From positions 124,001-169,644 of the forward strand of contig NW_026576170.1 in NCBI RefSeq assembly GCF_028641065.1: DNA of 45,644 nucleotides, read 5' to 3'. Both the position numbers and the translations under genes were made by a program. The DNA comes from Leucoraja erinacea. Taxonomy: Eukaryota. Shown piece after piece: positions 11,991-45,644 of this stretch. Within the stretch, counting starts at the first letter, position 1. Each line of letters begins with the position of its first letter. A model generated the notes under the pieces. It was not told the origin of the DNA and did no database searches. It saw nothing but the letters and a program-made list of their open reading frames with translations.

Positions 11991-13776
11991 TGACACCAGG
12001 ACTTTATTGCAAGATCGAAGAACAACACATCATCTTCCCCCGAGGCAAGGCGCAAATTTCTGAACATAACATATGAGTCTCTAACTCTACTAAATCTCTC
12101 TTCCTCGTCATTTGGAACACAATTGGGCATTTCGACGACTGTCTTGATTATATTGTCTCTCGTGAAAACGTTCCAAACTTGAAATGTCAAATCACAACAT
12201 CGTTCGGTCCAGAGAAATAAAATATCCTGACCTATACAGTCTCTCTCGGAATTCAACCTCTCCATTCCTGGCAAAAACGTTGTCATTAATACTCTGCCAC
12301 TCCCCAGATTAATGGTATCATCGCTAACATATTGCGATCTGAACAACATTGCACGCGCGGTCACGCCAACGTCCCAGAACAGATGGTTAAACTCCACTTA
12401 TGCCCAACTGCGTGTGACTCCTGCAGTGAAATAAGCCGACACCTCAAGCTGGCTGAGGGGAAACAAATCTTAACATCCACATTCAAATTTACTCGCATTG
12501 GTTGCAAGCAAATTGTTCATGAACAAGATGGAGAAAAGGCCATGTCTCTGTGCTGTGTAACATGCAACTACCACTTACAGTGAGAGTTGGTTCAATATAC
12601 CTGCCTCTCCCGTGAAGGAGAGTTGGCGCGGCGTCCCCTTTAAATATTTACCGCCTCATTTTAGACTTTTGCCCTCTTTTAGAGACCTACATCCGAGGAA
12701 CACAGTAAAATACCACAACTGATCTTCTTGTCATATGTTAACCCTCCACAACTCCTCCAGGTTTTGTTCGCAGCAGAGGGATAAGGCTTCTGCATTAGCC
12801 AGTCCATCTCACAATTCACACTCTCCAATATTAGTACCATTCTTATGAATAGAGTTGCATACTTAAATGAATCCTAAATGCACTATTTCGAAAAATAATA
12901 TCCCTCCCCCTGTGGTGTACTGCTCTGAAGTTTTTGTCAGTGAATTGCTTAGGTCGAGTGCAGCAAACAACACTTCTTTCTTGGGTCAAGACTTTCTTCA
13001 GGACGATCTATCCCCAAACATTTACAGCCGGTGAGATTCTCCTTAACCGATTCAATCACCTTGTACATCAACATACTTGACATCTCCAACGGATCATTGA
13101 ATTGAGAAGATTTCGCTCTAATATCTGGAATAACGTCAAAACTGTTCACCTCTGTGTTTTATGAATTAACACATTTCTTTAAAGATAATCTGTTGATCAA
13201 GAACATTTCTAGCCGCTGCATATTTCCAGTCAGTTGTCACATTACACATTATATTCGCCTATTCTTTACTTCATGAAGTGGCAACAGTTGAAATACATTA
13301 ATGCTGCTGTTGTAGCTGAATTGTATACGATGTCGTCTAGAAGGTTCCCTGTGGTTTACATCATTTAGACCCTGCCCAAAAATGATTATCTTTCCTTTTG
13401 AAAGGCAGCTCCACGGATAATGCAAGATGAAATCATTAATGGGTGCATGTTAAATGAAGGGAACGGTGTCTGGAAAATGCATTGCAAATGCGACAAGTAA
13501 TATATTGTATTACATCGTAGTATGTGTGGATAAATGCTACATTACACGTGTTTTGCTGCATCTGTGTGCCACCCGTTAAAATTTAAAAATAGAATGTTCA
13601 CTCGTATTTTACAGTTCCTTAGTTCTGTTGGTGCTCAGCTGGTGCCTGAGCAGCGGGCGGTCGCATAATGAGTTTGATCGCTTTGCATCACCTGGGAGCA
13701 AACTATTTGTTCAACGGTCCACAATAAATGTCCGCGGGGAGGTGAACGCACGCAGTCCTTCAGTTTTTTCTAAGAA

Positions 13777-13784
13777 TATAAATA
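13777..13784 (+). promoter_or_regulatory. TATA box, GPCR copy 1
   Basis: TATAAATA about 80 bp upstream of the ATG, conserved in copy 2. Confidence 0.6.
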
Positions 13785-13857
13785 TAGCGCTGTTTGCCAT
13801 CTCACTTTGACTCCTATAAGTTTTGCACTGCATAACTGCGGACGGCTTGAAGGAAAA

Positions 13858-16572
13858 ATGGGTTGGAAGCGGCACTTGGAAGTTGAATATTATTATTATC
13901 CAATTCTGGCAGCAATCGGAGTACCCGGTAGGTGAATGGAACGCAGTAAGTGGGACTGAGACGTGGGATGATGTGTTGGTAAAAGCATTGTTAAAGGTAA
14001 AGTGAAAATAGTGTGCGAAACACGGGGATGCTAGACTGCATTCTTCAGGTTAGGGCTGTATTAACTAGAAAATGTTTGTTTAAGAAATGACTGCAGTTGC
14101 TGGAGAAATCGAAGCTAGACAAAAATGCTGGAGAATTAGACAGCGGGTGAAGCGGCATCTATGAAGCGAAGGAATAAGTGACGTTTCGGGTCGAGACTGA
14201 TCAGTCTGAAGAAGGGTCTCGACCCGAAACGTCACCTATTCCTTTGTTAATCTACTGGATCGTTCGTCGTTCATTGGATCTGGCACAGGTTAATTCTCTT
14301 CAGATTCAGGTTTAGGTGCATTGTTGTCATGTCTCTCCGGGAGCTGCAAAAAGCATTGGTTTGCAAGAAATCCAAATTAGATCAAATAATATTAAATATC
14401 AGTACAAACAATTCAATCTCAGTAACAGGTAGTGTAAGAGGGGAAATCGGAGTGCAGAGCGTAGTTCAAGTTTGGGAGCGCACTGCAGCGTATCACATCC
14501 ACAAAGCCCAATGTCCGCAAGGGGATAGAGGTGAAACGGCAATACCCTGGCATATGGAAGAGCGGCTCAGAAGCCTGACAACAGAGGGGAAGAATCTGTT
14601 CTGGAGTCTGGTGGTGCGAGCTTTAAGCCTTCTGTATCTTCTGCCCGACGGGTGCAGGGAGTAGAAGGAATGAGCGGGGTGAGACATGTCTCCGTTTCCA
14701 AGGGATTGTGAAGTGCAAACGCAGTCAACAGTGCGGAGTCTATTTCGTAATAACGACCCGGCATCTTCCAGAACCCTGCGCAATTTACTCTTTATAGGGC
14801 ATATATCCCCACAACAAGCTGTGATACACCCAACAGTATGCGTTCTATGCTAATCTGTCGCAGCATGTTTGAGTAATCAGAGGCAGGTCAAAGTTCCTCA
14901 GACTTCTCAGTAAAGGTGTTGGTCTGCCGCTGGCTGTCCCTTCGATGTGGTCGTCCAACAAACATCGTTGGTAATACGAGGAACTTGACGCCCTCAATCA
15001 CTTCCACTTCAGCACCGTTGTTGCTGACCGGTGATCCACCGCATTTCCTGATATCGATAACTTGCTCCTTGGCCTCGTTGATACTGACATAGAGATTGTC
15101 ATCATCTGGGAGCTTGTGGGAGCAGTCACAGCCGCATTTGGCCGCGGGGTCGTGAGTGCATGGGAGGAAGAACCCGGAACCGGATGAGACGTCTTTATGC
15201 GGCACCGTTGTAGAGAATTATTGTGGAAGGGGTGTTATAACTACTACTCACTGATTAAGGTACGTTCATTAGAACATTAGAAGCTGGTGTGCTGATCGCT
15301 AGGCTCGGGAGCTTATCAATGGGTTGGATGGGAGTAGTGTTGGGAATGGGAATCTGACTTTCGACTCCTTGCTGCCCGGCTGTTCCCGGGAAGGGTTTAG
15401 GTCCAGGACGATGGCGTCTGATGCGGACATGTTGCTGCAATATGCAGTCTGCGGTGCAACAAGTGTGGCTGGGAGACAGCTTACGCTGCCTTCGTAGACC
15501 GCTGCTACGTAATCCGCACAGCTCCTTAGCACGCACCCATGTTTGTATGTGGGACAGTTTTTTTAGAACAAATAAGCAAAGCGTACCCAAGTTTGACCCC
15601 CGCCTCCAAATGAGCATCGCGTTTCCCTTACATGTAACGACAGTTTTCTCTTTTCCAGTGAACTTGCTGGCGATTGTGATCCTGTCCTGCAGAAATTGTG
15701 GTCTCTCCAAATGCACCACTCGGTACCTGGTGGCCATGGCGACGGCGGACCTCTTGGTGATCGTCTGCGAAGTGATATTACATCGGATTGCCGACCTTTC
15801 CTGGATGTACTCTTTCCTCTTCCACTATACTGTGTGCAGGTCCATTATATTCCTCGCTCCCGCGGCCGTTGCCTGTTCTGTTTGGCTTACGGTCGCTTTC
15901 ACATTTGATCGCTTTGTGGCCATTTCCACTCAGAATCTGAGAACCAGATACTGCACCGAGAGAACCGCGCTGGTGGTTATAGTGACCCTAACTGCGTTCT
16001 TCTGTTTACTGAACGTCCCCTGGCCCTTTGCGTACAATTATTATTTCAGGGATCAGCAGGGTACACAGTGGGGCTGCCTAATAAGATATCAGTTTTATGG
16101 CCAATCCTCGTGGATAGCATTTTCCTGGACTCAACAGCTGCTAGTCCCAGTCATTCCATTTTGTTTAATTATGCTGATGAACGTGCTCACAGTCAGACGC
16201 ATTTTAGTGGCCAGTCGTGTCCGCAGAAAACTCCGCGATCTCAGTAATGAGGACCCCGAGATCGCAAACCGCAGACGGTCTGTAATTTTACTCCTTGCAA
16301 TCTCCAGCAGTTTTATGGTGCTATGGGGCACAAATGTAGTATATTTCGTTTTCTATCGAATTACGAATGCATTTCGTGCCAGGGTGTTGATGAACCGATT
16401 TCCAACATTTGAACAAACTGGAATTCTGCTACAACTGTTGAGCACCTGCACAAACACGGTAATTTACACCGTGGCCCAGAGGAGGTTCAGAGAGCATCTG
16501 CTCCAGGTACTCATGTACCCCTTCACCCTAACTGTAAGCTTAATAAAATCGAGAAAACCTGGTGTAAAATAA
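13858..16572 (+). CDS. Class A (rhodopsin-like) GPCR, GPR139/GPR142-like, copy 1; exons 13858-13927 and 15659-16572; 327 aa
   Basis: Exon 1 MGWKRHLEVEYYYYPILAAIGVP with G|gtaggt donor joins in phase to ttttccag|TG AAC (VNLLAIV). Seven hydrophobic segments, GVPVN, YLVAMATADL, FDRF, TM3/ECL2 cysteines and NTVIY are present, with no stop codons. Confidence 0.92.
14080..14247 (+). mobile_element. Penelope-like palindromic element with minimal hammerhead core in GPCR1 intron
   Basis: CTGAAGA-A-GGGTCTCGACCC-GAAACGTC at 14206-14233. Confidence 0.65.
14300..15420 (-). mobile_element. Decayed Rex1/Babar LINE in GPCR1 intron
   Basis: Frame HPAHSFYSLHPSGRRYRRLKARTTRLQNRFFPSVVRLL is typical of a Rex1 ORF C-terminus. 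Counterpart at ~30130-30900 has a ~375-bp deletion. Confidence 0.8.
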
Positions 16573-17021
16573 CATTACAAATCCCTTTGTGAGTGAGTGC
16601 AAAAACTAGGTAATGAAGGAGTTTTGTCTGAAAGCTTTCCGCATAAATTTTCAAAAACATAGCTGAGAAATACAATCTGAACCTGCGTCCCCTGCACTGG
16701 AATGCATATTTGGCCATCTATTTAACATGCGACACGGGCGCGTTGTTCAAAGTGCCTAGTGGGAAGGGCGGCCATGTGGAACGAGTGCTATGTAGTACTG
16801 TAGCAGACCTCCAATGACTCCGGAATTGAGCCTCGCCGTTAACTGTTTCCACCTTCCTTTGAATCCAGGGGCAACGTCTCCAGCACGCAATGAAAACAGA
16901 CAGAGAGTTATGGTCCTAAACATTGCATGCTCCATTACTCTACAATTCTTTGAGACGTTCCATGTTTACGCATGTAAATGCCCAGTGCACCAATGTGTTT
17001 AATACAATTCTTCCTGCAACA

Positions 17022-17532
17022 TTTTAATTCAATTCAATACAATTCAATTCAATTCAATTCAATTCAACTTTATTGTCATTGCACAGATACAAGTATGGGT
17101 ACAACGAAATGCAGTTTAGCTCCAGTCCGTAGTAATAGTGCAATATAGAAATAAAACATACAGAATAAGCAAACAATGCGGACGGAGAGACTGGAGAAAT
17201 CTATCGGCGGGACTCCGAGTTCAGCAATGTGATAGTGTTCTTGTAGAAGCTGTTCCTCGTCCTACTAGTACGAGACCCGAGGCTCCTGTACCGCCTCCCT
17301 CATGGGAGGTGGGCAAACAGTCCATGGTTAGGGTGGGAGGGGTCTTTGATGAACTTCCCGGCCCGTCTCAGACACCGTTTTCGGTGCAGGGCATCCATGG
17401 CAGGGAGCGGGGCACCGATGATATACTGAGCGGTTTTCACCACCCGTTGTAGTGCCTTCCTGTCCGCTACGGTGCAACTGCTGTACCATACCGTGAAGCA
17501 GGTTGTCAGGATGCTTTCGATGGTACAGCGGT
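17022..17532 (-). mobile_element. Rex1/Babar LINE 3' fragment with (CAATT)n tail; copy-1-specific
   Basis: YRCTIESILTTCFTVWY...ALQRVVKTAQYI. Absent at the homologous site 32517. Confidence 0.85.
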
Positions 17533-17728
17533 ACGTTAATGAGAGTTCCATTTTATATTTGTTTCTCGCACTGAATGTAATGCCCCGTTGCTTCTTACAG
17601 ATGCGTTCGGTTTTCAGTACAATTAGTAATTCAGTGCCAGATGCAGCCAAAGGTAGTGAGTGGGTGTTATTCATACAAGTTGGCATTACTAATTATATTT
17701 TTAATGCAAGCAATGAGTAACAAGCGAG

Positions 17729-17797
17729 TGTCCAGTAGAGGGCGGTAAAGTGAGTAAGTTCACCTGAGTGGTAAAGAGATGCTGAATCGATTTGCAT
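17729..17797 (+). promoter_or_regulatory. CTCF-like motif + octamer, cassette copy 1
   Basis: TGTCCAGTAGAGGGCGGTA (17729-17747) and ATTTGCAT (17790-17797). Confidence 0.45.
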
Positions 17798-18454
17798 TAA
17801 TGTCCCACCTCCATTGATGCAGCGCCGACGTTGGAGCTCTGCCTATTGGAGATTCGAGTGAGTGCTCACAGTCGGATTTATTTCCTCCAGCAGGGCAAGG
17901 AAATGTGAGAAATTCATTAATTTATTTTCTTCACCGATGGCGGCTGAGAATTGTATAGCTCCAAATTTGAGTTGAGTACTCTCTCTCCAAATCCTCCGCT
18001 CCCGACGCGGTAACGATTACATTTTTACATATTCTGATTGACATTTTCCCTCTCGAGGCCGAAAATACCTTCGCTGAACATGTTATGCTTTATTTCTCGA
18101 CATTACTGATTGAAGTTAAAAAAAAAAGCAAAAGACTGAATTGAAAACGACTAGCTTCAACTGATGATGTCACAATGGCTCGGCTAGCAGTGATCAGCTT
18201 CACTTACGTTCGGGAACGGCTTGAGTTGGGGGACCACGCCTCCTTATCAGCTACTTTCCAACTGTATCATATCTGCAGGACCTTCTCTATCTGCTTCCAG
18301 ACCCATACACTAATTTATTGCACAAACACATGTGTTACTTTTTAAGCTAGGGTGCTCAACATTTGCAAGTAAATTAACAGGCACAACCCTCGGTAACGTG
18401 CAGGAATGTTTCGCGGAACACCTCCGCTAAATTCGCATAAAACTGCATGATCTC

Positions 18455-19020
18455 CCCTTGCTAAATAGCCTACAACTTATTCTTAAACTGTGGTCCCTAG
18501 GCCTGGACCCTCTCATATCGGGAACATGGTTCCTGCCTCCAACGTGCCCAATCCCTTAATAATATTTTACGTTTCAAAAGAGCTAATCTCAGCATACCAA
18601 ATTCCAGTGTATACAAGCCCAGCCGCTCCGTTATATCCACATATGACAGTCCCGCCATCCCGGGAATTAACCTCGTGAACCTACGGTGCACTCCTTCAAT
18701 AGCAAGAATGTCGTTCCTCAAATCTGGAGACAAAAACTGCGCACAATACTCCTGGTGTGGCCTCACTAGGGCCCTGTACAACTGCAGAATGGCCTCTTTA
18801 CTACAATACCCAATTCCTCTTGTTATGAAGGCCAACGTGCAATTAGCTTTCTTCACTGCCTGCTGTACCCGCATGCTTATTTTCAGTGAGTGATCAACAA
18901 GGACACCAAGTGATACCCATCACCTTCTCAAGTGCAAAAGTTTCCCTCCCGTTCCTGTTAAACATTTCCCCTCTCACCTTTAACCTAATTCCTCTGGTTC
19001 TTGATTCTCCAACTCTGGGT
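18455..19020 (-). mobile_element. CR1 LINE fragments
   Basis: QQAVKKAN...LYRALVRPH..YCAQF. Also at 34540-35130 and, inverted, at 43110-43330. Confidence 0.85.
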
Positions 19021-19454
19021 AAAGGACAAGATACAATATACATTTACTTGTCACATGTACCAGTTGCTACAGTGAAATGTGTGGTCACCATATAACCATA
19101 CAATAAAATAAAGAACACAACACACGATAGAGTCGAACATAAAACATCCCCACACAGCAGAATACAGTTTCCCACTGTGATTCACGTGTGATTCACGTTG
19201 TCCAATCCGCTAATGACTTCATACACTCTGCCTCGTGCGCCCAAGGAACATAGGCTCAAGATATCAGAGATCCGCTGTGGACACAGGCCCTTCGTCCCAC
19301 ACAATCTGCGCTTACCATCGATCACCCCATACAGTAGCACTCTACTACAAGCTGGAAACAATTTACTATTTATAGACATTAAAAATAAACTATATTTCTG
19401 TACGTGCTTCGAGTCTGGAGGAAACCGGAGCACGTGGAGAAAACCCAGGTAGTC

Positions 19455-20280
19455 ATCAGAATCAGAATCGGAATCAGAATTATGTGTATTGTCATTTTAA
19501 AGTAGGTTCAAACGAAATTACGTTCCTGCAGACAGACCAACAACAACAAAAAACACACAATTAGCACAATTCCACACAAACATCCATTACATTGAATCTC
19601 CAAACACCTCCTCATTGTGATGGAAGGCAAAGGTCTTATCTCTTCCCTGTTCTCTGTTCTTTATTCTTGTCCCGCAGTCAAGCAGTCAAACTGCTTCATC
19701 AAGCTGATCGAAGCTTTTGATGTTCGAGACCCCGGCGGACGATGGTACGTCCCGCGTTCGTTCACGCGGTGCCGGGCGATATAAGGCCCTGCTACCGGTC
19801 GATTTAAAGCCCTTGATTCGGGCGGGAGAAGTTGCCGTTGCGGGAGCTCCGAAAAGTTGTCCCCCACAAGGGACCCGCGAGCTCCCGATGTTACCTTCCA
19901 CGGGGCCTGCAGCCGGAGCCTCCGAAGCGCCGTAGTCGGGTCGCAGCCGCGCGCCACCACAGCGCTCCGCGCGCCGATGTCGGCAGCTCCGCGATAGTGA
20001 GTCCGCAGGCTGTGCGACTGAAGCCCCAGGCCGATTCCGGTTGGAGGCCGCCTGCTGCACGATGTTAGGCCCCAACAACCACGGAGACTCGAGAGGGAAA
20101 AGGTCGAGTCCCAGAACGGGGAAGATATTTAAAAATCCCCCCTGCACCCCCCTCCCGCCCACATATACACAGCTAAAAATAACATAAAACTAAACCAAAA
20201 CATACATCTAACAAGACAAAAAGAAAGAAAGGAGAGACAGACGGCGGAGGCCATTGCCGCGAGGCGCCGCCTTCTTGTCC
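19455..20280 (-). mobile_element. GC-rich non-autonomous retroelement with (TCAGAA)n tail
   Basis: Present in all three cassette copies (35565-36365; 41735-42690 inverted). Confidence 0.6.
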
Positions 20281-20405
20281 AACCGTGAGAACTTGCAAAA
20301 TCGTTACCGACAGCTACGACACTACGCCGCCTAATTTATTCCTAGCCTGTTCAACCTATCCTTTCAGCGATGTCACTGGAGGTAGTATAGTAGAGCTATG
20401 ATCTG

Positions 20406-20832
20406 GAACATAGAAACATAGAAACATAGAAAATAGGTGCTGGAGTAGGCCATTCGGCCCTTCGAGCCTGCACCGCCAGTCGATATGATCATGGCTGATC
20501 ATCCAACTCAGTATCCTGTACCTGTCTCCTCTCTATACCCCCTGATCCTTTTAGCCACACGGGCCACATCTAACTGCATCTTAAATATAGCCAATGAACT
20601 GGCCTCAACTACCTTCTCTGGCAGAGAATTCCACAGATTCACCACTCTTTGTGTAAAAAATGATTTTCTCATCTCGGTCCTAAAAGACTTCCCTCTTATC
20701 CTTAAACTGTGACCCCTTGTTCAGGACTTCCCCAACATCGGGAATAATCTTCCTGCATCTAGCCTGTCCAACCCCTTAAGAATTTTGTAAGTTTCCATAA
20801 GATGCCCCCTCAATCTACTAAATTCTAGCGAA
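20406..20832 (-). mobile_element. CR1 3' fragment; absent from inverted copy
   Basis: (gaaacata)n tail. Empty site ctatgatctagtgaaggtg on the minus strand at ~41494-41512. Confidence 0.85.
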
Positions 20833-21670
20833 GGAACAACCTTCTAGTGAAGGTGTTGTCATGTTCCTGTTGTGGAGGAATTCCCAGACTATAGCGATGT
20901 CGAGAAGTAATTCAGTACCGGATCATTGAGCAAAAACAGTAATTACGGCATTAAGGTATTTGCACATTTGTGCAGTGGCCCATTGGGAAAGGCGCCAGCC
21001 GTATTTAAAGTGTTTAATTTTACTGCCATCACGTGAATATCCACCAGGGGATTTATTTCAGCAGTTGCTGTAGCTATGTATCTGGTGTCCAGTGATGTAT
21101 CCTGCGACACAGATGTGGATTACTCAGTATGGCCCAATGGTGAACTATCCATCTGCATTACAGCTAATCCGCCATTTGCGGTAAATAGTTTGTTTTATTG
21201 ACTTCCTATTCTTCCTGCGTCCCGGACGATTTTGCTGCTATTAGTGAAGGCCAATCACCACCTGAAATTGGAAAGTCTGTCAGGGTGTCGGTGAAGTGGA
21301 ATTGGGTAACGCAATCGTGACAATTCAGGGCCAGCCAATCCTCCATCCAGAGACACCCTCGTTTTAATAACTAAAATTGTAAAATCTGCAGTTATTAACC
21401 AGGTTATCCAGGACTGAGAGAGAATGAAACAGAACACACGTTTCAGATATCTGGTCACATGTTCTATCCCCCTGTCATAAGAGCTCTTGTAATTCTCTGC
21501 AGCTAGCGGCTAATGTTATGGAAACGGATTCCGGAGAAGCAGCTCGCAGTTGGAAACAATAAAACCACCAGGACACCTGCACACAATGAAAGCAAACCGA
21601 CAACTGAGAGAGAACAGGAAATCAGGCACATCCAACCGCATCAGCGGAGCAGAGAGCAAGACAAAGGCGA

Positions 21671-21708
21671 TGTTTTTGTAAGGGGCTTAACTTGTTTCCA
21701 TCACTGTG
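21671..21708 (-). other. RSS of V3 (22-bp spacer)
   Basis: Minus strand CACAGTG, 22 bp, ACAAAAACA. Confidence 0.95.
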
Positions 21709-33452: not shown

Positions 33453-33869
33453 CACTTACGTTCAGGAACGGCTTGAGTTGGAGGACCACGCCTCCTGTGG
33501 TGGCTACGGGTAGGGAACGGGTGCGTTGGGGGAGCGACCCTTTCGACCCTCTCAAAACTTTACATACCTCAACCAGAGCTTCCTGCATTCTCCGACATTC
33601 CCGAGGGAAAGAATCCAGATATGACCAATCTCTCTTCCTGCACCGCTAATCCAGCCACCATTCCGGTAAATGAGCAACTGCGACTCTAAAAACGCTGTAC
33701 TTAGTAAATGTGTCCGTCTTGCCGAATTGGCAAATGCTGCTGGTGGTCACTTTGCTGCTGGTCACCAATTTGTACAGCGTGCAAGTTTAGTTAGTTTACG
33801 TTAGTTAGTTTACGGCAGGTGTCCATAGAGTAGCATGTCAGAACTTTAATTTTCCCAACGGTCGGTTCT

Positions 33870-34320: not shown

Positions 34321-36609
34321 GAAAATAAGCTAATCAGCTAATTTCCATCTGTGTCCTATCACAGGACCTTCTCTCTCCGCTTCCAGCCCCATAAACTAAT
34401 TTATTGCACAAACACATGTGTTACTTTTTAAGCTAGGGGGCTCGACTGTGGCAAGTAAATTAACAGGCACGATCCTCGGCAACGTGCAGGATCGTTTCGT
34501 TGAACATCTCCGCTCAATTCGCCTAAAACAGCATGATCTCCCGCTTGCTAAATAACCTACAACCTATTCTTAAACTGCGGTCCCTAGGTCTTGACTCTCT
34601 CAACATCGGGGACATGGTTCCTGCCTCCGACGTGTCCAATCCCTTGATAATATTTTATGTTTCAAATAGATTCCCTCTCGTCCTACTAAATTCCATTGTA
34701 TACAAGCCCCGCCGCTCCATTGTATCCAGATATGATAGTCCCGCCATCCCGGGAATTAACCTGGTGAACCCACGGTGCACTCCCAACCCACGGTACACTC
34801 CTTCAATAGCAAGAATGTCGTTCCTCAAATCTGGAGATCAAAACTGCACACACTACTCCTGGTGTTGTCTCACTAGGGCCCTGTACAACTGCAGAAGGAC
34901 CTCTTTGCTCCTATACTCAACTGCGCTTGTTATGAAGGCCAACGTGCAATTAGCTTTCTTCACTGCCTGCTGTACCTGCATGCTTACTTTCCGTGAGTGA
35001 TGTACAATGACCCCAGGTGATACCCATCACCTTCTCAAGTGCAAAAGTTTCCCTCCCGTTCCTGTTAAATATTTCCCCTCTCACCATTAACCTAATTCCT
35101 CTGGTTCCCGATTCTCCAACTCTGGGCAAAGGACACGATACGAGATACATTTATTTGTCACATGTACCAGCTGCTACAGTGAAATGTGTGGTCAACATAC
35201 AGCCATACAATAAAATAAAGAACACAACACACGATAGAGTCCAACATAAAATATCCCTACACAGCAGAATCAAAGTTTCCCACTGTGATTCTCGCGTGAT
35301 TCACGTTGTCCGATCCGCTAATGATCTCGTACACTGCGCCTCCTGCGCCCAATGAAAATAGGCTCAAGAAATCAGAGATCCGCTGTGGACACAGGCCCTT
35401 CGTCCCATACAATCAGCGCTTACCAACGATCACCCCAGACAGCAGCATTCTACTACAAGCTGGAGAATAGGTACAATTTACAGACATTAAAAATAAACTA
35501 TATTTCTGTACGTATTTCGAGTCTGGGAGGAAACCGGAGCACCCGGAGAAAACCCAGGCGGTCATCGGAATCAGAGTCAGAATCAGCATGCCGTTTATTG
35601 TCATTGAAACACAGGCTCAAACGAAATTACGGTCCTGCAGTCATACCAACAATAAAAAAACAATACACTAAATTAACACAATTCCACACAAAGATCCATC
35701 ACAGTGATTCTCCAAACACCCCCTCACTGTGATGGAAGGAAAAAGTATTTTATCTTCGCTGTTCTCGGTTCTTTATTCTTCTCCCACAGTCAAGCAGTCA
35801 AACTGCTGCATCGATCTGATCGAGGCTTTTTATGTTAGAGCCCTCAGCGGTTGACGGTAAGTCCAACGTCCGTTGAAACCGCGCCGGGCGATATAAGGAC
35901 CTGCTACGGGTCGATTTAATCCTCTCGATTCGGTCGGGAGAAGTTACCGTTGCGGGAGCTCCAAAAAGAGGTCTCCTACCAGGGACCTGCGAGCTCCCGC
36001 TGTTACCGTCCACAGAGCCTGCAGACGGAGACTCCGAAGCTCCGAAGTCCTAGTCCGCAGGCTCCGCGACTGGAGACCCAGGTCGATTCCGGTTGGAGGC
36101 CGTCGGCTGCACAATGTTGGGCCCCAACGACAACGGAGACTTGACAGGGAAAAGGTCGAATATTCGTACAGGGAAGAGATTTAAAAGCCCCCCCCCCCCC
36201 CCCCCCCACCTCCACCCCCCCCCCCCCCCCCCCCCCCACACACCCACATATACACAGCTAAAAAGTATATAAAACGGAACCAAAACAAACACCAAACGAG
36301 ACAAGAAGAAGGAAAAGACAGACGTACAGCAGAGGCCGCTGCCGCGAGGCGCCGCCATCTTGTCCAATCGTCAGAACTTGCAACATCGATACTGACAACA
36401 CGGTACTCAGGTTCTAACCCGGGTCTCCGACAGTGTAATGCCTCTGTCCCACTTAGGACACTTGAACGGAAAACTCTGGTGACCTTGCCCGCAACCCAAG
36501 GTTTCCATGAGGTCGCCAGATGTTTTGGTTACTCGCCTGGAAAGCCTCGAGCTCGATCGACCGAAGCGTGAGCTGCGTCTACCGACCAAAGATCATACAC
36601 GACGACCCA

Positions 36610-36610
<1 letters not shown>

Positions 36611-36667
<57 letters not shown>
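36611..36667. repeat. (CA)n microsatellite at the inversion junction
   Basis: About 28 CA units, directly followed by sequence inverted from 24308. Confidence 0.95.
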
Positions 36668-36669
<2 letters not shown>

Positions 36670-38029
36670 TTCACACAGCTACCCAGCTTTGTGTCATCTG
36701 CACATTTGCTAATGTTATTTGTGACCCCTTAGGTGGGAGGTAAAATTGTGTAATTTGTGTAAACATTATTGAATGTATGTTTAGCTTCCGAGAATGTCGG
36801 ATGGGGGTTTTGTAAGGATCATGTATTGTACATATTTATTTCTCGAATAAACTATATATTTCGAAATCCAAAGAATTGACGCACTATGACTGTTCCCACA
36901 ATTCACAATAATCCCAGTTGTTTTTCCCATAGTCGAGGTCAGTGAAGGCGGAACTGTTTCCATGTAAAGACCCAGTCAAATGTTGCGATTTCACACCTTA
37001 TGGCTGCTCCTCCCCAATTGCCCTGATATCCACGCCACTCCGCGAGCAGGTGAGCGAGAGTGCATTTCAATTATCGTCCAATCTCCAGTGGTTTGTTTCC
37101 ATGATGGACAACATGTTGTATGGTTAGCATATTCGAAAATATTATTTATGGGCCATTGTTGGCATATATTTTCTTCGATTTTGGAGATATATTTTCAATG
37201 TGAATATCAATATTAATTTGAATCTGAGACCCCTGGCCGCATGAACCAGTCGGGGTTATGGCAATGTTAGCCGTTGGTAGCAATAATGTTTATGTATTTT
37301 GCATAAGTATATTATTTTAAATGTTTGTGAGCTGCTGACTGTTCACGTGGTTGAGGCGACGCTGAAACTACACAGAGTGAACGATGCGCGGTCTAATAAT
37401 GTTGCCGCTGGAGACAGAAAGATGCCGCCATACTGCCTGACCACGAACCGAATTCAGGCAGCAACGGTCGGTGCGCAGAATGCAGATCACTAGGCCACTC
37501 GATACACTGCTGCAACTCATGGAAATTACAAACCTATTTTTCCGGCTAGCTGTGGTTATATTTCAACAATCACCCAGCTGCACGCTTTTAAAAACAAATC
37601 ACACGTTTTGTCGGCACAGTGGCGCAGCTGCTGCTGCCTCAAAGCTTCAGACACCCGGGATCAATCCTGTACTCGGGTAATGTCTGAGTGTAGTTTTCCC
37701 GTCTCGCTGTGACCGTGTAGGTATCGTCCAGGTGCTCTGATTTCCTCCCGTATGCCCAATACGTGTGTTTGTTTTAGGTTAATTGGCCTCTGTAAACATG
37801 CACCAAGTGTGTAAGGAATAGATGGAAAGGTGGAATAACACGGAACGAAAGTGATCGGGTCATCGATGGTCGGCGTGGGCTCGGCGGGGTGAGGTCCTCA
37901 GGAATTAATTTCATATGCCAAAACATGGCAGATGTAGGGGAGTGGAACTGAACACATTCATTGAAAATGGCTCCTTGCACATCCTTCTGGCTTTGCTTGT
38001 AATTTACTTCACTTATTTACTTATTTTCC

Positions 38030-38828
38030 TCGGTAATCATGAAATGCTTCGAGAGGCTGGTGAAGAAACACATCTGCGCCTTCCTCCCTCGCAACATAGA
38101 CCTGTTACAGTTCGCATACCGTCCGAACAGATCCACGGACGATGCGGTCTCCCAGGTTTTGCACACCGCTCTCTCCCATCTGGACAGCCAGAAGGGGGGC
38201 TACGTGAGGATGTTGTTCATACACTTCAGTTCAGCCTTAAACACGATAGTCCCCACCAGACTGGACGAGAAGCTACTGGAATTAGGGCTCAACACCCCAC
38301 TGTGTGCCTGGGCCCTGGACTTTCTCGCCGCCAGGCCCCAGGTAGTCAAGATGGGAGGAAATACATCGAAGTCCCTCACCCTGAGCAAAGGATCGCCCCA
38401 GGGTTGCGTCCTCAGCCCCCTATTTTACTCCCTGTACACACATGACTGTGTGGCTAGGTTCAGCTCCAACTCAATAATCAAGTTTGCTGATGACACTGTG
38501 GTAGTGGGCCGGATCTCAGACAACGATGAGAAGGCCGACCGATAGGAGGTGGCTGATCTAGCACTCTGGGGTCAGGACAACAGCCTCCGATTGAACATCA
38601 AAAAACTAAGGAGCTGATCATGGACTTTAGGAGGGCACATCATCCTATGACGTACACACCATTGAGCATAAATGGGGATACTGTGGATAGGGTGAACTCT
38701 TTTAAATATCTGGGAGTCCACATCTCTGAGGATATGACATGGACATCACACGCCGCAGCACTTTTCATTTCACTCACATCTCGTACGTGTATGTGACGAA
38801 TAAACTTGACTTGACTTGACTTGACTCG
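38030..38828 (+). mobile_element. Rex1/Babar RT fragment with (GACTT)n tail; copy-3-specific
   Basis: [31 protein letters not shown] and KFADD motifs. Absent at the homologous site ~23005. Confidence 0.9.
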
Positions 38829-39010
38829 TGTAGAAATCACATGCATTTCTCAATGTATACATCAAAACATCGTAATAATTCCCATTTTCTCCACACGGCC
38901 GAAGCGACTGCACATCTGCCCGTAGCCTTTGGACGGATGACGTTAATACTGTGTTGTTTCTTTTTAGAATCGTGGCATCATAGAGTCTTATTGCGTGGAA
39001 ACACACCCTT

Positions 39011-39545
39011 AGAAACATAGAAACATAAAAATAGGTGCAGAAGTAGGCTATTCGGCCCTTCGAGCCTGCACCGCCATTCAATATGATCATGGCTGATCAT
39101 CCAACTCAGTATCCTGTACCTGCCACCTCTAACTCCCTCTTGAATATAGCCAATGAACTGGCCTCAACTGCCTTCTGTGGCAGAGAATTCCAGAGATTCA
39201 CCACTCTCTGTGTGAAAAATGTTTTCCTCATCTCGGTCCTAAAAGATTTCCCCCTTATCCTTAAACTGTAACCCCTTGTTCTGGACTTCCCCAACATCGG
39301 GAACAAGGTTCCTGCATCTAATCTGTCGAACCCCTTAAGAATTTTGTAAGTTTCAATAAGATCTCCCCTCAATCTTCTAAATTCTAGCGCGTACAAGTCG
39401 AGTCTATCCAGTCTTTCTTCATATCAAAGTCCTGACATCCCAGGAATCAGTCTGGTGAACCTTCTCTGTACAAAAATGTCTGTCTTCAGATTAGGAGACC
39501 AAAACTGTGCACAATACTCCAGGTGTGGTCTCACCAGGACCCTAT
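39011..39545 (-). mobile_element. CR1 3' fragment with 8-bp TSD; copy-3-specific
   Basis: TSD ACACCCTT at 39003-39010 and 39546-39553. Empty site at ~22815-22830. Confidence 0.88.
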
Positions 39546-40170
39546 ACACCCTTCGGCCCAAATTGCCCACACCAGCCAACATGGTCCATCTTCACTAGTC
39601 CTACCTGCATGCATTTCGTCCATATCCTCAACATCCGTTCTATCCATGTATATGTCAACGCTCTTCATAAACTCTGCGACTGTGCCTGCCTTAACTACTA
39701 CCTCCGGCAGCTCGTTCCAAGCGCCGCCCCCTTTGTATGAAAAAGTTACCCTTCAGGTCTCTATTAAATCTACTCCCCACTCACTTTGAATCTATGTTCT
39801 CTGTTTCTCGATCCACCTAATCTGGCCAAGAGACTCTGTGAGTTTACCCAATCTATTCCATTTGTGAATATGCACCTTATTATTGTTTCGCGTAACAATC
39901 TCAGGCTTCGCACCATCACTGCCGGTTACAAGAACAAATATGCCTTCCTCAATCACGGTTTATTCAAGCGGATGCGAATACTCTCGGGGGGAAGCTGGAT
40001 TCTGGCTACGTGTATTTTAATTGGCTGAGACCCAGCTGCCCACGCACATCTCTGACTCCAATCACTGGGGGCACACCGCAGTGACAGCGAACATCCGGAG
40101 ACCAGCAGACACGATCCAGTTTTTGTCTCTTCAAGTTTCGAACTGAGCTAGTACATAGTGAACGGGTAAA

Positions 40171-40641
40171 ATGCGTTTCATCGGCATCTGTGTTGTGTGG
40201 GGAGCGTTTCTCACAGGTAATTCTGGATCAATATTTTCAGTTCCCCTCGCCCTTCTCAGTGAGATTTTGGCTTGAGAAGTGCAATCTCATGGCACTCCGG
40301 TGTCTGTTACTATCTCAATATATTTATTTTACAGTCACCATTCACGGAGAATCTGTCACACAGCCACTGCCCTCTGCGACGAAGACAAAAGGAGAAGCGG
40401 TGACTTTAACCTGTAACTATGATACCACATGGACAACATATGCTTTATTGTGGTACCGACAATATCCAGGCATGCAGCCCGAGTTTACTATGTCGAGAGA
40501 CACCAGCAACAATGAAGATAAGGCCCAATACGCTGATACTCGTTTCTCTATTGAGCTCAATACCGCGACTAAGTTCACCAGCTTGAGTATCTCAGGGCTG
40601 GATCTCAGCGACTCTGCAGTCTATTACTGCGCACTGGGGCG
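40171..40641 (+). CDS. TRAV/TRDV: TCR alpha/delta-type V gene (V4), inverted paralog of V3: leader 40171-40216, V exon 40335-40641
   Basis: Same leader peptide and splice sites as V3. Intact V domain with 6 aa differences from V3. Confidence 0.95.
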
Positions 40642-40679
40642 CACAGTGATGGAAACAAGTTAAGCCCCTTACAAAAACA
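40642..40679 (+). other. RSS of V4 (22-bp spacer)
   Basis: CACAGTG atggaaacaagttaagcccctt ACAAAAACA. Confidence 0.95.
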
Positions 40680-41867
40680 TCGCCTTTGTCTTGCTCTCTG
40701 CTCCGCTCATGCGGTAGGATGTGCCTGCTTCCCTGTTCTCTCTCAGTTGTCGGTTTGCTTTCATTGTGTGCAGGTGTCCTGGTGGTTTTATTGTTTCCAA
40801 CTGTGAGCTGCTTCTCCGGAATCCGTTTCCATAACATTAGCCGCGAGCTCAAGAGAATTACAAAAGCTCTTATGACAGCGAGATAGAACATGTGACCAGA
40901 GATCTGAAACGTGTGTTCTGTTTCATTCTCTCTCAGTCCTGGATAACCTGGTTAATAACTGCAGAATTTTCTGTTTTAATCAGACTAACTAGGGTGTCAC
41001 TGGATGGAGGATTGGCTGGCCCGTAATTGTCGCAATTACGTTAACCAATTCCACTTCACCAACACCCTGGCAGACTTTCTAATTTCAGCTGGTCATTGGC
41101 CTTCACTTATTGCAGAAAAATCGTCCGGGACGCGGGAAGAATAGGAAGTCAATAAACCAAACTATTTAACGCAAATGGCGGATGCAGTAATGCAGATGGG
41201 TAGTTCACCATTGGGCCTTGCTGAGTAATCCAGATCTGTGTCGCTGGATATATCACTAGACACCAGATGCATAGCTACAGTAACTGCTAAAATAAATACC
41301 CTGATGGATATGCCCGTGAGGTAAGTAAAATTAAACCCTTTGAATACACCTGGCGCCTTTCCAAATGGGTGACTGCACAAATGTGCAAATACCTTAATGC
41401 AGTAATTACTGTTTTTGCTCCATGAGCCGGTACTGAATTACTTCTCTGCATCGCTATAGTCTGGGAATTCCTCCACAACATCAACATGACAACACCTTCA
41501 CTAGATCATAGCTCTACTATACTCCCTCGAGGGACTTCGCAAAAAGGATAGTTTGAGCAGTGTATGAATATATTTGGCGGCATAGTGTCGTAGCTGGAGA
41601 GTTGCTCCCTTACACTGAAGACCCACCGGAAGGTAAACTAATTCCCAAGTGGGACAGGGGCATTACACTGTCAGAGACCCCTTTAGATCCTGAGTACGGT
41701 GCTGACAGTAACGATTTAGTAAATTCTCCCGTTTGGACAAAATGGCGGCGCCTCGCAGCAGCGGCCCCTACGGTCTGTCTTTTATTTATGTTTGTCTTGT
41801 TAGGTGTATGATTTAGTTTATTAGCTGTGTTTGTGTGTGTGGAGGGAGGACGTTTGCGGGGGGAGGT

Positions 41868-41898
<31 letters not shown>

Positions 41899-43339
41899 GG
41901 GGTGTTGGGGGGGGGGGTTAAATCTCTTCCCTGTACGGGGACTCGTACGCGACATTTTCACTGTCGAGCCGTCGTTGTCGTAGGGGCCTAACATCGTGCA
42001 GCCGGAGCGGGCCGACGTCGGAGCGCGGAGCGTTGTGGCGACGCGCGGCTGCGACCCGACTTCGGGGCTGCTGAGGCTCCGTCCGCAGACCCTGTGGGCG
42101 GTAACATCGGGAGCTCGCATGTCCCTGGTGGGAGACCGCTTTTCGGAGCTTGCGTAACGGTAACATCTCCCGCTCGAATCGAGGGGTTTAAATCAACCCG
42201 TAGCAGGACTCTCTATCGCCCGACGCGGCGCGGGACTTACCATCGCCCCCCGGGGGCTCCAACATCAAAAGCCTCGATCAGCTCGATGCAGCAATTTGAC
42301 TTCCAGAATGCGGAAGAAGAATTAAGAACAGAGAAGGGAAGAGATAATATTTTTGCCTCCCATCACAGTGAGGAGTTGTTTGGAGATTCACTGTGATGGA
42401 TGTTTGTGTGCAATTGAGATAATTGTGTTTTTTTGTTGTTGTTATGACTGCAGGAACGTAATTTCGTTTGAACCTATGTTTAAATGGCAGTCCAACCTCA
42501 CGGTGTGCATGTGGTGAGCAGTAAACAATGCAACACATCATTGAAGCATGTCCTCAACAAAGACTCAAAGGAGGACTTGTCACCCTTCGTACAGCAGATC
42601 AAGAGGCAACTGCTTGGCTAAAGGACTTTGCATTCGCTAAATAAATAATGACAATAAACCGCATTCTGATTCCGATTCTGATTCTGATGACTGCCTGGGT
42701 TTTCTCCGGGTGTACCGGATTCTACCCTGTCTCGAAATGCGTATTTTTTAATATCTGCAAATTGTAACTTGTCAGCTTGTAGTACAGTGCTACTGTATGC
42801 GGTGATCGTTGGTAAGCGCAGTTTATGTAGGAAGAAGGGCCTGTGTCCACGACGGACCTTTGAAATCTTCAGCCTATATTCCTTGGGCGGAGGAGGCTGA
42901 GTCTATGAAATCATTATCGATTGGACAACGTGAATCACACGTGAATCTCAGTGGGAAACTTTGATTATGCTGTGTGGGGATGTTTTGTGTTGGGCTCTAT
43001 CGTGTGTTGTGTTCTTTATTTTATTGTATGGTTATATGGTGACCACACATTTCACTGTACCAACTGGTACATGTGACAAATAAATGTATCTTGTATCTTG
43101 TACTTTACCCAGAGTTGGAGAATCAAGAACCAGAGGAATTAGGTTAAAGGCGAGAGGGGAAATATTTAACTGGAACGGGAAGGAAACGTTTGCTCTTGAG
43201 AAGGTAATCGGTATCAATTGGGGTCCTTGTACATCACTCACTGAACGTAAGCATGCAGGTACAGCAGGCAGTGAAGACAGCTAATTGCACGTTGGCCTTC
43301 ATAACAAGTGGAATTGAGTATAGGAGCAAATATGTTAAT

Positions 43340-44310
43340 TCTGATTCAGATTTCAGATTCAGATTCACCTAACGACTGCACACCTGTACATGGCACTAAC
43401 ACCATCATCAAGTATGCAGATGATACAACGGTGATTGTTCTCATCAGCAACAACGACGAATCGGCCTATAGGGAGGAGGTCCAGCTCCTAGCAGCATGGT
43501 GCGCTGACAACAATCTGGATACTTAACTCCAAGAAGACCAATGAGCTCATTGTAGATTTCAGGAAGTCTAGGGGCGGCGCGCACACTCCCATCCACATCA
43601 ACGGGACGGAGATGGAACGTGTTTCCAGCTTCAGGTTCCTGGGGGTCAATCATCTCCGATGACCTCTCTTGGATCCACAATACCTCAACTCTGGTCAAAA
43701 AGGCTCACCAGCGTCTCTTATTCTTGAGGAGACTGAAGAAGGTCCACCTGTCTCCTCAGATTCTGGTGAACTTCTACCGCTGCACCATCGAGAGCATCCT
43801 TACCAACTGTATCACAGTATGGTATGGCAACTGCTCTGTCTCCGAACGGAAAGCACTGCAGAGGGTGGTGAAAATTGCCCAACGCATCACCGGTTCCTCA
43901 CTCCCCTCCATTGAGTCTGTCCAAAGCAAGCGTTGTCTGCGAAGGGCGCTCAGCATAACCAAGGACTGCTCTCACCGCAACCATGGACTGTTTACCCACA
44001 TACCATCCGGAATGCGCTACAGGTCTCTCCTTTGCCGGAAAAGCAGGTCCAGGAACAGCTTCTTCACTGCGGCTGCCACACTACTCAACAATGTACCTCG
44101 GTCACCCCCACCCCTTCCACCCGCCCGGACACTCCTCCCACAGGAAAAACACTATGACTATATGCATGTAAATAGATTTATTTATTGGAATCGTATTCTA
44201 TGTTGCTCTTCCAGGGAGATGCTAACTGCATTTCGTTGTCTCTGTACTGTACACTGACAATGACAATTAAAGTTGAATCTGAATCTGAATTTGAATCTGA
44301 ATCTGAATAT
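43340..44310 (+). mobile_element. Rex1/Babar LINE 3' fragment with (TCTGAA)n tail; copy-3-specific
   Basis: IIKYADDTTV and KKAHQRLLFLRRLKK...FYRCTIESIL. Confidence 0.9.
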
Positions 44311-44869
44311 GTGAATATAATGGAGCGGCTGGGCTTGTATACACTGGAATTTAGTAGGATGAGAGGAGATATTTTTGAAACATAAGAGATTATTAAGGGA
44401 TTGGACACGTTGGAGGCGAATTGAGCGGAGGTGTTCAACGAAACGATCCTGCACGTTGCCGAGGATTGTGCCTATTAATTTACTTGCCACAGTCGAGCCC
44501 CCCTAGTTTAAAAAGTAACACATGTGTTTGTGCAATAAATTAGTTTATGGGTCTGGAAGCAGAGAGAGATGATACTGCAGACAGGACGGAGATGGAAAAA
44601 AGCTGATTAGCTTCCTTTGAATAGACAATATGTGCAGCAGTAGTGCATTCGGCCCTTCGAGCCAACACCGCCATTCAATGTGATCATGGCTGATCATCCC
44701 CAATCAGTACCCCGTTCCTGCATTCTCCTCATATCCCCTGACTCCGATATTTTTAAGAGCCATCTCCAGCTCTCTCTTGACAGTATACAGAGAACCGACA
44801 CCCTGAGGCACAGAATACCACATACTCACCACACGGTGTGAATATTTGTTTCCGCATCTACATCTAAAT

Positions 44870-45602
44870 AGGACGTACAAGGTAAATGGTAGGGAATTGA
44901 AGAATGCAGGTGAACAGAGGGATCAGGGAATAACTGTGCACAGTTTCCTGAAAGTGGAATCTCATGTAGATAGGGTGGTAAAGAAAGCTTTTGGTGTGCT
45001 GGCCTTTAGAAATCAGAGCATTGAGTATAGAAGTTGGGATGTAATGTTAAAATTCTACAAGGCATTGGTGAGGCCAATTCTGGAGTATGGGGTACAATTT
45101 TGGTCGCCTAATTATAAGAAGGATGTCAACAAAATAGAGAGAGTACAGAGGAGATTTACTAGAATGTTGCCTGGGTTTCAGCAACTAAGTTACAGAGAAA
45201 GGTTGAACAATTTAGGGCTTTATTCTTTGGAGCGCAGAAGGTTAAGAGGGGTCTTGATAGAGGTCTTTAAAATGATGAGAGGGATAGACAGAGTTGACGT
45301 GGATAAGCTTTTTCCACTGAGAGTAGGGAAGATTCAAACAAGAGTACATGACTTGAGAATTAAGGGACAGAAGTTTAGGGGTAACATGAAGGGGAACTTC
45401 TTTACTCAGAGAGTGGTGGCAGTGTGGAATGGGCTTCCAGTGAAGGTGGTGGAGGCAGGTTCGTTTTTATCATTTAAAAATAAATTGTACAGTTATATGG
45501 ACGGGAAAGGAATGGAGGGTTATGGTCTGAACGCAGGTATATGGGACTCGAGATGGCCTGGTTCCGTGCTGTAATTGTTATATGGTTATATGGTTATATG
45601 GT
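44870..45602 (+). mobile_element. Second-family CR1 3' fragment with (ATATGGTT)n tail nested in an older CR1
   Basis: ORF 44846-45574 (YKALVRPILEYGVQFWSP...FFTQRVVAVWN), flanked by a TAAAT duplication (44865-44869, 45603-45607). Confidence 0.88.
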
Positions 45603-45644
45603 TAAATGGCTTACCCCTTATTCTTAAACAGTGGCCCTGGTTCT

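What the first reader, a model, noticed from the sequence alone, without database searches (positions are those of the whole stretch)
12715..45644. GPCR and V segment amplify together as one convergent cassette; a third GPCR is predicted just past the window
Seen: the unit [GPCR(+)-spacer-V(-)] occurs at 12.7-24.3 kb, again directly at 28.5-36.46 kb (truncated before its V), and inverted from 36.67 kb onward. The last ~40 bases of the window are the reverse complement of ~34033-34073, about 2 kb 3' of the GPCR2 stop. Inference: birth-and-death duplication acts on a joint TCR-V/GPCR module, and a minus-strand GPCR should end roughly 2 kb beyond position 45644 unless indels intervene.
Basis: partly seen in the sequence, partly recalled or inferred. 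Interest (0 to 1): 0.78.

Follow-up and report, generated by a model that had tools for sequence, protein, structure and literature searches.

The report
Skate GPCR–TCR V block, triplicated
In little skate DNA, a block of about 11.6 kb holding one orphan receptor gene and one T-cell-receptor V segment was copied about three times, once upside down; this looks like ordinary copying of neighbouring genes, and the third receptor gene predicted just past the window could not be checked.

Summary
Unit A (12709-24307) carries a GPR139-like GPCR (+) and a convergent TRAV/TRDV-type V segment (-). B (28524-36458) is a direct copy of A 12709-~20312. C (36665 to the window end) is an inverted copy of A 24307-~18000. 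The last 41 bases equal the reverse complement of 34033-34073, after a C-specific LINE-like insertion.

- The GPCRs have two exons (a 70-nt first exon 1.4-1.7 kb upstream) and both are intact.
- Both V segments are intact, with identical 23-spacer RSSs.

Divergence is alike for all pairs (noncoding K2P about 0.09-0.14; dS 0.083 for the GPCR, 0.094 for the V), so the copies arose in one burst.

Limits:
- Only A holds both genes. B and C overlap only in the spacer.
- The B/C joint (repeat fragment plus (CA)28) is not bridged by independent contigs.
- Two other V segments in the window have no GPCR partner.

Best reading: passive co-duplication of linked genes, like olfactory-receptor genes among mammalian TRAV genes or trypsinogen genes in TRB. 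This scan had already noted GPCR/V interleaving elsewhere in this genome.

The parts
12709..24307 (.). Unit A: the only copy in the window with both the GPCR (+) and the V segment (-)
   Evidence: Its limits are set by homology to B (start 12709) and to C (end 24307)
13858..13927 (+). GPCR1 exon 1: ATG plus 70 nt of coding sequence, followed by a GT donor, phase 1
   Evidence: Motif scan, sequence. It matches the N-termini of family members P0010 and P0121
15659..16572 (+). GPCR1 exon 2: AG acceptor, 303 codons plus stop, 7tm_1 domain
   Evidence: Pfam 7tm_1 E = 8.1e-19. Acceptor seen. 100% identical to XP_055486184.1 of Leucoraja erinacea
21670..22179 (-). V_A: leader exon 22179-22134, intron, V exon 22015-21709, RSS CACAGTG-23-CAAAAACAT at 21708-21670
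   Evidence: 93.6% amino-acid identity to the V_C reading frame
14819..15192 (.). A-specific 374-bp insertion in the GPCR1 intron. Other A-specific insertions lie at 17022-17529 and 20407-20831
   Evidence: Pairwise alignment, BLAST, sequence
28524..36458 (.). Unit B: direct copy of A 12709-~20312, ending before any V segment
29691..29760 (+). GPCR2 exon 1 (70 nt, 21 of 23 residues the same as in GPCR1)
31149..32062 (+). GPCR2 exon 2: intact, 303 codons plus stop. The 8-bp difference upstream lies in the intron, so it is no frameshift
36459..36667 (.). B/C joint: 152 bp of unrelated repeated sequence (36459-36610), then (CA)28 (36611-36667)
   Evidence: Summed word depth of the bin is about 1.6e4 in run X1
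36665..45644 (.). Unit C: inverted copy of A 24307-~18000 and of B 36458-34033. It runs off the window
40171..40680 (+). V_C: leader exon 40171-40216, V exon 40335-40641, RSS 40642-40680. It is the only V of the window on the + strand
   Evidence: Pfam V-set E = 7.4e-14. The single-domain chains that match over the whole V exon are TCR alpha and delta
38016..38832 (.). C-specific insertion with a reverse-transcriptase fragment. Further C-specific insertions lie at 39011-39553 and 42487-42650
   Evidence: RVT_1 E = 4.1e-17 for 38039-38542
44870..45603 (+). C-specific LINE-like 3' fragment with a (GGTTATAT)n tail and an AAAT/TAAAT target-site duplication
   Evidence: The element type is my reading of the reading frame and the tail; Pfam found no family for the 242-aa reading frame
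45604..45644 (.). Last 41 bases, equal to the reverse complement of B 34073-34033, about 1.97 kb past the GPCR2 stop

Best explanation
This is part of the little skate (Leucoraja erinacea) TCR alpha/delta V region. A low-copy block of at least 11.6 kb carries a two-exon orphan class-A GPCR gene (named GPR139-like by NCBI) and, tail to tail with it, one TRAV/TRDV-type V segment. That block was copied in one burst of segmental duplication into three paralogous copies.

Later rearrangement left copy B cut off about 4.4 kb after its GPCR, and copy C inverted and abutting B at a joint made of a repeat fragment plus a (CA)n run. Retrotransposon fragments then entered each copy separately. Both GPCRs and both V segments stayed intact.

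The two gene kinds were copied together simply because they are neighbours, as passengers in block duplication of a V array. No functional coupling is needed to explain it.

Shown: the homology map, the gene structures, the intactness of all four genes and the equal divergence. Inferred: that each copy once held both genes, that the order of events was tandem triplication followed by inversion, and that C continues into a third GPCR.
For: - Homology map.
- Species and locus. GPCR1 exon 2 is 100% identical to XP_055486184.1 of L. erinacea on a 169,644-bp contig, and all of that model's exons map in the window. All four V segments have 23-spacer RSSs. The single-domain chains that match over the whole V exon are TCR alpha/delta.
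- Equal age of the copies:
  - Noncoding K2P is 0.064-0.137 for A-B and 0.090-0.174 for A-C. Within one 700-bp block it is 0.109 (A-B), 0.117 (A-C) and 0.136 (B-C).
  - dS is 0.083 for GPCR exon 2 (A-B) and 0.094 for the V exon (A-C).
  - In columns 1500-3104 of the three-way alignment, private changes number 70 (A), 83 (B) and 89 (C), summed.
- The unit is not a transposon. Its unique parts have summed word depths of 14-50, against 10^5-10^6 for the embedded repeats.
- Precedents for passenger genes in TCR loci. Olfactory-receptor genes lie among TRAV1 genes (PMC4574546, passages read). Trypsinogen genes are duplicated within TRB (PMC2685407, passages read).
Against: - Only A holds both genes in the window, so two separate partial duplications that overlap in the spacer are not excluded.
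- The (CA)28 at the B/C joint is not bridged by any listed contig. Only the B-to-filler edge at 36458 is bridged, by one contig of an independent study (X5 record 22, 36314-36489, with exactly 31 letters beyond the edge). A second contig (X3 record 15) has only 23 letters beyond it. The inversion could therefore be an assembly error.
- B and C share two stretches that A lacks: part of B 33495-34329, and about 100 bp at 36400-36458. This could mean B and C are sisters, yet B-C is the largest of the three distances. The order of events stays unresolved.
- omega is 0.69 for the GPCR pair, which leaves the selective state of the copies open.
Confidence: 0.68

Rival explanations
1. Recurrent joint cassette. 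Throughout the skate TCR alpha/delta locus the GPCR family and the V segments expand as fixed GPCR-V modules, possibly with shared regulation or selection.
For: - This window holds a block with both genes and two paralogous partial copies.
- A close GPCR paralogue, P0121 (XP_055522167.1, 91% identical to GPCR2), lies on another 208,102-bp scaffold. A fourth sequence, P0002, exists in a public run assembly.
- Unchecked notes from this scan report GPCR/V interleaving on several other pieces of this genome. One first-reader note says 'duplicated with it'.
Against: - Two of the four V segments here have no GPCR or relic near them. With GPCR1 as query, no hit lies outside the two genes. With six family queries, 4 of 25 tblastn rows lie outside the two genes, all at E >= 0.033.
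- No V proteins of skates are in the protein collection: 3 hits among 10 candidates, none from a cartilaginous fish. Adjacency elsewhere could therefore not be tested.
- An earlier follow-up on another window found no co-duplication. That is an unchecked note.
Confidence: 0.12
2. Two independent partial duplications. One copied the GPCR plus spacer (A to B) and another, inverted, copied the V plus spacer (A to C). Their ends happen to overlap in the spacer, so GPCR and V were never copied as one piece.
For: - No copy except A holds both genes.
- B and C overlap only over A 18243-20312 plus a B/C-shared stretch.
- Three sequences cannot give a rooted order of events.
Against: - All three pairwise divergences are about equal.
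- B ends at a repeat fragment plus a microsatellite that directly abuts C, which looks like a secondary breakpoint.
- C is still homologous to B at the very last base of the window and is heading toward the GPCR.
Confidence: 0.12
3. Assembly artefact at the joint. The three copies are real, but the inversion of C and the truncation of B come from a misjoin at the (CA)28 run in a repeat-rich, unplaced 170-kb scaffold.
For: - No listed contig from 3 DNA-type runs spans 36601-36678, and reads appear cut there.
- The scaffold is a short one, 169,644 bp.
Against: - There are no N runs in the window.
- Contigs from two independent studies cover 36314-36489 and 36488-36592 at 98-99% identity.
- Short-read contigs normally break at microsatellites, so the missing bridge has little weight.
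Confidence: 0.08

Closest known systems
Olfactory-receptor genes interspersed among the 5' TRAV genes of mammalian TRA/TRD loci (human OR10G2 between TRAV1-1 and TRAV1-2, OR4E2 between TRAV1-2 and TRAV2; PMC4574546, passages read)
   Same: Class-A GPCR genes with no known immune role sit between rearranging TCR alpha/delta V segments.
   Different: The receptor here is not an olfactory receptor. It belongs to a divergent family that NCBI names GPR139-like. Its best solved relatives score only about 29 bits, with the CCK-A receptor and GPR139 equal. The passages I read do not say that the mammalian OR genes were co-duplicated with V genes. My memory that OR10G3/TRAV1-1 and OR10G2/TRAV1-2 form a duplicated pair is unchecked.
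Trypsinogen genes inside the TRB locus, duplicated within it to differing extents (5 in cattle, 8 in human, 20 in mouse; PMC2685407, passages read)
   Same: A non-TCR gene family lives inside a TCR V array and changes copy number through local duplication.
   Different: It is a different locus and a different gene family. The passages read do not state that trypsinogen and V segments share single duplication units.
Block duplications of V genes in TRA/TRD, where sheep TRAV duplications seem to have occurred together with TRDV1 amplification (PMC4574546, abstract and passages)
   Same: Blocks of several genes are copied as units in a V array. Inverted V segments are also known there.
   Different: The co-amplified partners in sheep are both V segments. 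Here one partner is a GPCR gene.

Membership tests
Class A (rhodopsin-like) GPCR, Pfam 7tm_1 | Match to PF00001 above the gathering score over the seven-helix core | tested here: met
   GPCR1 scores 68.5 bits and GPCR2 61.1 bits against a cut-off of 30.5, both covering profile positions 2-260 of 260
Class A (rhodopsin-like) GPCR, Pfam 7tm_1 | Intact reading frame with usable splice sites | tested here: met
   Exon 1 is 70 nt with a GT donor. Exon 2 has an AG acceptor and 303 codons to the stop, in both copies. The two exons were never joined for any search
GPR139/GPR142 orthology group | Clearly closest to bona fide GPR139 among characterised receptors | tested here: not met
   Against solved structures, GPR139 (E = 6.3e-6, 29.0 bits) does no better than the CCK-A receptor (E = 4.6e-6, 29.5 bits). 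The GPR139 name comes only from NCBI's automatic naming
Elasmobranch-expanded 'GPR139-like' family | High-scoring relatives in sharks, skates and rays, and a 23-codon first exon with a phase-1 intron | tested here: met
   927 proteins at E <= 1e-20 among 3722 candidates. All named rows of the 120 listed are cartilaginous fishes. The exon-1 peptide matches P0010, P0019 and P0121
Germline TCR alpha/delta V gene segment | Leader exon, short intron, and a V-set exon with the conserved Cys, Trp and YYC | tested here: met
   46-nt leader, 118-nt intron and 307-nt V exon containing TLTC...WYRQ...YYC. V-set E = 7.4e-14
Germline TCR alpha/delta V gene segment | RSS with a 23-bp spacer directly after the V exon | tested here: met
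   CACAGTG, 23 nt, CAAAAACAT, identical in V_A and V_C
Germline TCR alpha/delta V gene segment | Seen rearranged to a J segment in transcripts | not tested
Segmental duplication (usual working definition, recalled: at least 1 kb and at least 90% identity, low copy) | Kilobase-scale, low-copy paralogous blocks | tested here: met
   The blocks are 7.9 kb and at least 9 kb long. Unique parts have word depths of 14-50. Identity is 75-91% by block, so the event is older than the 90% convention
   Only A holds both within the window. C runs off the end and B is truncated
No skate V proteins are in the collection

The most novel reading that the evidence does not exclude
In skates, the TCR alpha/delta V array may be the nursery of a large orphan GPCR family. 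GPCR-V blocks would be the recurrent unit of birth-and-death evolution across the locus, so the two repertoires expand, invert and decay together. Every deletional V-J joining would also remove a defined set of receptor genes from that T cell's chromosome.
Probability: 0.12. Interest if true: 0.6.

Novelty: new member of a known kind. Interest (0 to 1): 0.3.

Why it matters
The result shows, for one block, how an unstudied receptor family of sharks, skates and rays can gain copies: by riding along with the block duplications that build V arrays.

If this held locus-wide, the growth of that family would be tied to the turnover of an antigen-receptor locus. As it stands, it is an ordinary case of passenger genes in a segmental duplication.

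The practical gains are:
- corrected gene models (two-exon GPCRs, with an unannotated exon 1 and an unannotated intact GPCR2);
- a precise, cheap test: read the next 5-20 kb of the scaffold.

Tried and rejected
A look-up of earlier notes past the window end was outside the allowed range. Notes near the window end showed nothing downstream.
- Finding V-family relatives by protein search, hoping to use contig length as a locator. There were 3 hits among 10 candidates, none from a cartilaginous fish.
- Earlier notes by sequence with P0121 came back blank.
- A search for GPCR relics beside the other V segments and between the units found none.
- The idea that GPCR2 is frameshifted is rejected. The 8-bp difference lies in the intron before the acceptor.
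- The idea that the whole unit is a large transposon is rejected, because its unique parts have low word depth.
- Uncollapsed haplotypes are rejected, because divergence is 9-14% and each copy has its own insertions.
- A RAG-made germline inversion at the V RSS is unlikely. B breaks about 1.3 kb from where the RSS would lie, and I saw no heptamer at the joint. I did not test this further.
- tRNA and Rfam scans, run to type the repeats, found 0 genes and 0 matches.
- RNA evidence. One oligo-dT run (X24, about 5% of it read) gave depth 0 in 4 of the 5 bins over GPCR2 exon 2, and 1.52 in the fifth. All sizeable RNA depth lay on repeats. This does not show that the gene is silent.
- Literature:
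  - 'GPR139' with 'elasmobranch' found 0 papers.
  - 'GPR139' with 'shark' found 4 papers, none relevant by title (listing only).
  - The searches listed nothing on skate TCR loci with GPCRs (listings only).
  - I saw the little skate genome paper PMC10115646 only as a listing. Its supplements, which are closed, might list gene-family expansions.
Full report
**What the window is.** GPCR1 exon 2 (15661-16569) is 100% identical to XP_055486184.1, 'probable G-protein coupled receptor 139' of Leucoraja erinacea, on a 169,644-bp contig. The two extra 3' exons of that model also map exactly in the window, at about 17601-17651 and 19674-19784. The window is therefore little skate DNA. It holds four V-set segments with 23-spacer RSSs. 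For the V_C exon, the solved single-domain chains that match over its whole length are TCR alpha and TCR delta V domains. I read it as part of the TCR alpha/delta V region. The window contains no N.

**The observation.**
- Unit A is 12709-24307.
- B (28524-36458) is a direct copy of A 12709 to about 20312, at 86-91% identity over most of its length (75.7% in the last block).
- C (36665 to the end) is an inverted copy of A 24307 back to about 18243, and of B back to 34033.
- The last 41 bases (45604-45644) are 41 of 41 identical to the reverse complement of 34073-34033.
- They come after a 734-bp C-specific insertion (44870-45603). That insertion has a (GGTTATAT)n tail and an AAAT/TAAAT target-site duplication, and I read it as a LINE-like 3' fragment.
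- Those 41 bases belong to a repeat with summed word depth near 10^6 in public runs, so alone they are weak evidence. The B-C match, however, runs from the repeat into low-copy sequence (34330-34524 to 44610-44414), which supports true positional homology.

**Gene structures.** The GPCRs are not single-exon genes.
- A motif scan found exactly two exon-1 candidates.
- They lie at 13858-13927 and 29691-29760. Each has an ATG, 23 codons plus one base, and a GT donor.
- Exon 2 starts after an AG, at 15659 and 31149.
- The 8-bp difference upstream of GPCR2's exon 2 lies in the intron, so GPCR2 is not frameshifted.
- Both exon 2 frames are open for 303 codons, and both match Pfam 7tm_1 over the full profile.
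- V_A (-) and V_C (+) each have a 46-nt leader exon, a 118-nt intron, a 307-nt V exon with the conserved Cys, Trp and YYC, and the same RSS, CACAGTG-23-CAAAAACAT.

**Age and order of the copies.**
- Noncoding K2P distances are 0.064-0.137 for A-B blocks and 0.090-0.174 for A-C blocks. In one 700-bp block present in all three copies they are 0.109 (A-B), 0.117 (A-C) and 0.136 (B-C).
- In the clean part of a three-way alignment (columns 1500-3104), private changes number 70 for A, 83 for B and 89 for C, summed from the bins. Columns 856-1200 of that alignment are misaligned, because C holds other sequence there, and I left them out.
- Synonymous divergence is 0.083 for GPCR exon 2 (A-B; 17.2 of 218.8 sites) and 0.094 for the V exon (A-C; 6.0 of 68.2 sites). 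omega is 0.69 and 0.33 respectively.
- All this fits one burst of copying. Three sequences cannot give the order of events.
- B and C share two stretches that A lacks: part of B 33495-34329, and about 100 bp before 36458. Part of the first stretch is low-copy sequence, and B-C is not the smallest distance. Deletions in A are therefore as likely as a B-C sister relation.

**Joints.** B's homology stops at 36458. Then come 152 bp of unrelated, repeated sequence and a (CA)28 run (36611-36667), and C starts at 36665, inside a repeat copy that A also has at its end.
- One contig of an independent study (X5 record 22, 36314-36489) bridges the 36458 edge, with exactly 31 letters beyond it. Another (X3 record 15) has only 23 letters beyond it.
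- Nothing listed spans the (CA)28 run.
- The inversion is therefore plausible but not independently confirmed.
- After copying, each unit received its own insertions:
  - A: 14819-15192, 17022-17529 and 20407-20831.
  - C: 38016-38832 (with a reverse-transcriptase fragment), 39011-39553, 42487-42650 and 44870-45603.

**Does the unit amplify as a cassette?** Within the window only A holds both genes. B gives GPCR plus spacer and C gives spacer plus V, and they overlap in about 2-3 kb of spacer. Whole-unit copying is the simplest reading, given the equal ages, B's end looking like a secondary break, and C still following B at the last base. It is still an inference.

Against a general rule, V0 (about 2646-2951) and V1 (about 7443-7829) have no GPCR or relic near them. 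With GPCR1 as query, tblastn found no hit outside the two genes. With six family queries, 4 of 25 rows lie outside the two genes, all at E >= 0.033.

**More copies of the subfamily exist.**
- P0121 (XP_055522167.1) lies on a different 208,102-bp scaffold, and P0002 comes from a 1,270-bp contig of an unnamed public run.
- Over 290 exon-2 positions, GPCR2, P0002 and P0121 are 90.0-91.4% identical to one another and 87.6-88.6% identical to GPCR1.
- Contigs laid on GPCR2 exon 2 carry the letters shared by GPCR1, P0002 and P0121, at 5-10 times the word depth of the unique flanks. That fits several collapsed paralogues.
- P0002 could be the predicted third GPCR, but nothing places it there.

**The prediction.** If C is a full copy, a minus-strand exon 2 should end about 1.97 kb (34033 minus 32062) past position 45644, plus any insertions. 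My estimate that a GPCR or its relic is there is about 0.6.

**Comparison with what is known.**
- Class-A GPCR genes among TCR alpha V segments are known from mammals: olfactory-receptor genes between TRAV1-1, TRAV1-2 and TRAV2 (PMC4574546, passages).
- Trypsinogen genes live and duplicate inside TRB (PMC2685407, passages).
- Block duplication of V arrays is the rule (same papers).
- The receptor here is not an olfactory receptor and not a clear GPR139 orthologue. Against solved structures, GPR139 and the CCK-A receptor both score about 29 bits.
- The receptor belongs to a large family: 927 proteins at E <= 1e-20, and the named rows among the 120 listed are cartilaginous fishes.
- I found no paper on this family in these fishes ('GPR139' with 'elasmobranch': 0 papers; 'GPR139' with 'shark': 4 papers, irrelevant by title).
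- Earlier notes of this scan already report GPCR/V interleaving on other pieces of this genome. What this window adds is a dated block that contains both gene kinds.

**Verdict.** The finding is an ordinary mechanism (passenger genes in a segmental duplication) in a new setting. Interest is modest, and the next step is cheap and decisive.

Noticed in passing
window 13858-13927, 16533-19784: The NCBI model XP_055486184.1 lacks GPCR1's exon 1. It also splices exon 2, just before the canonical stop, to two plus-strand exons in the GPCR-V spacer (about 17601-17651 and 19674-19784). GPCR2 has no protein in the collection although it is intact.
   Followed up: partly
window 24443-24884: Directly after unit A lies a stretch about 71% identical to 13101-13536 and 28925-29371, the region upstream of GPCR exon 1. 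It may be a relic of an older round of the same duplication. No exon-1 relic follows it.
   Followed up: partly
window 40171-40680: V_C is the only one of the four V segments on the plus strand. If the J and C genes lie on the low-coordinate side, as the other three V segments imply, V_C could join only by inversion. Its frame and RSS are intact.
   Followed up: no
window 31100-32084: Public-run contigs laid on GPCR2 exon 2 carry the letters shared by GPCR1, P0002 and P0121, not GPCR2's own, at 9 checked places. This includes three residue changes at codons 21, 195 and 209. Their word depth is 5-10 times that of the unique flanks, which fits collapsed paralogues.
   Followed up: partly
window 33858-34448, 34843-35039, 36616-36812: Repeat fragments related to a LINE-like 3' end have summed word depths of 10^5-10^6. 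They account for nearly all RNA reads laid from the oligo-dT run. At least nine copies of the roughly 400-bp element lie in the window.
   Followed up: no
window 26001-28000: A purine-rich stretch (GC skew 0.35, AT skew 0.16) lies between units A and B. An inverted, 72%-identical copy of 9858-10975 lies at 26511-27652.
   Followed up: no
window 15661-16569 vs 31151-32059: omega is 0.69 between the two GPCR exon 2 copies, against 0.33 between the two V exons. Selection on the receptor paralogues is therefore relaxed or diversifying.
   Followed up: partly
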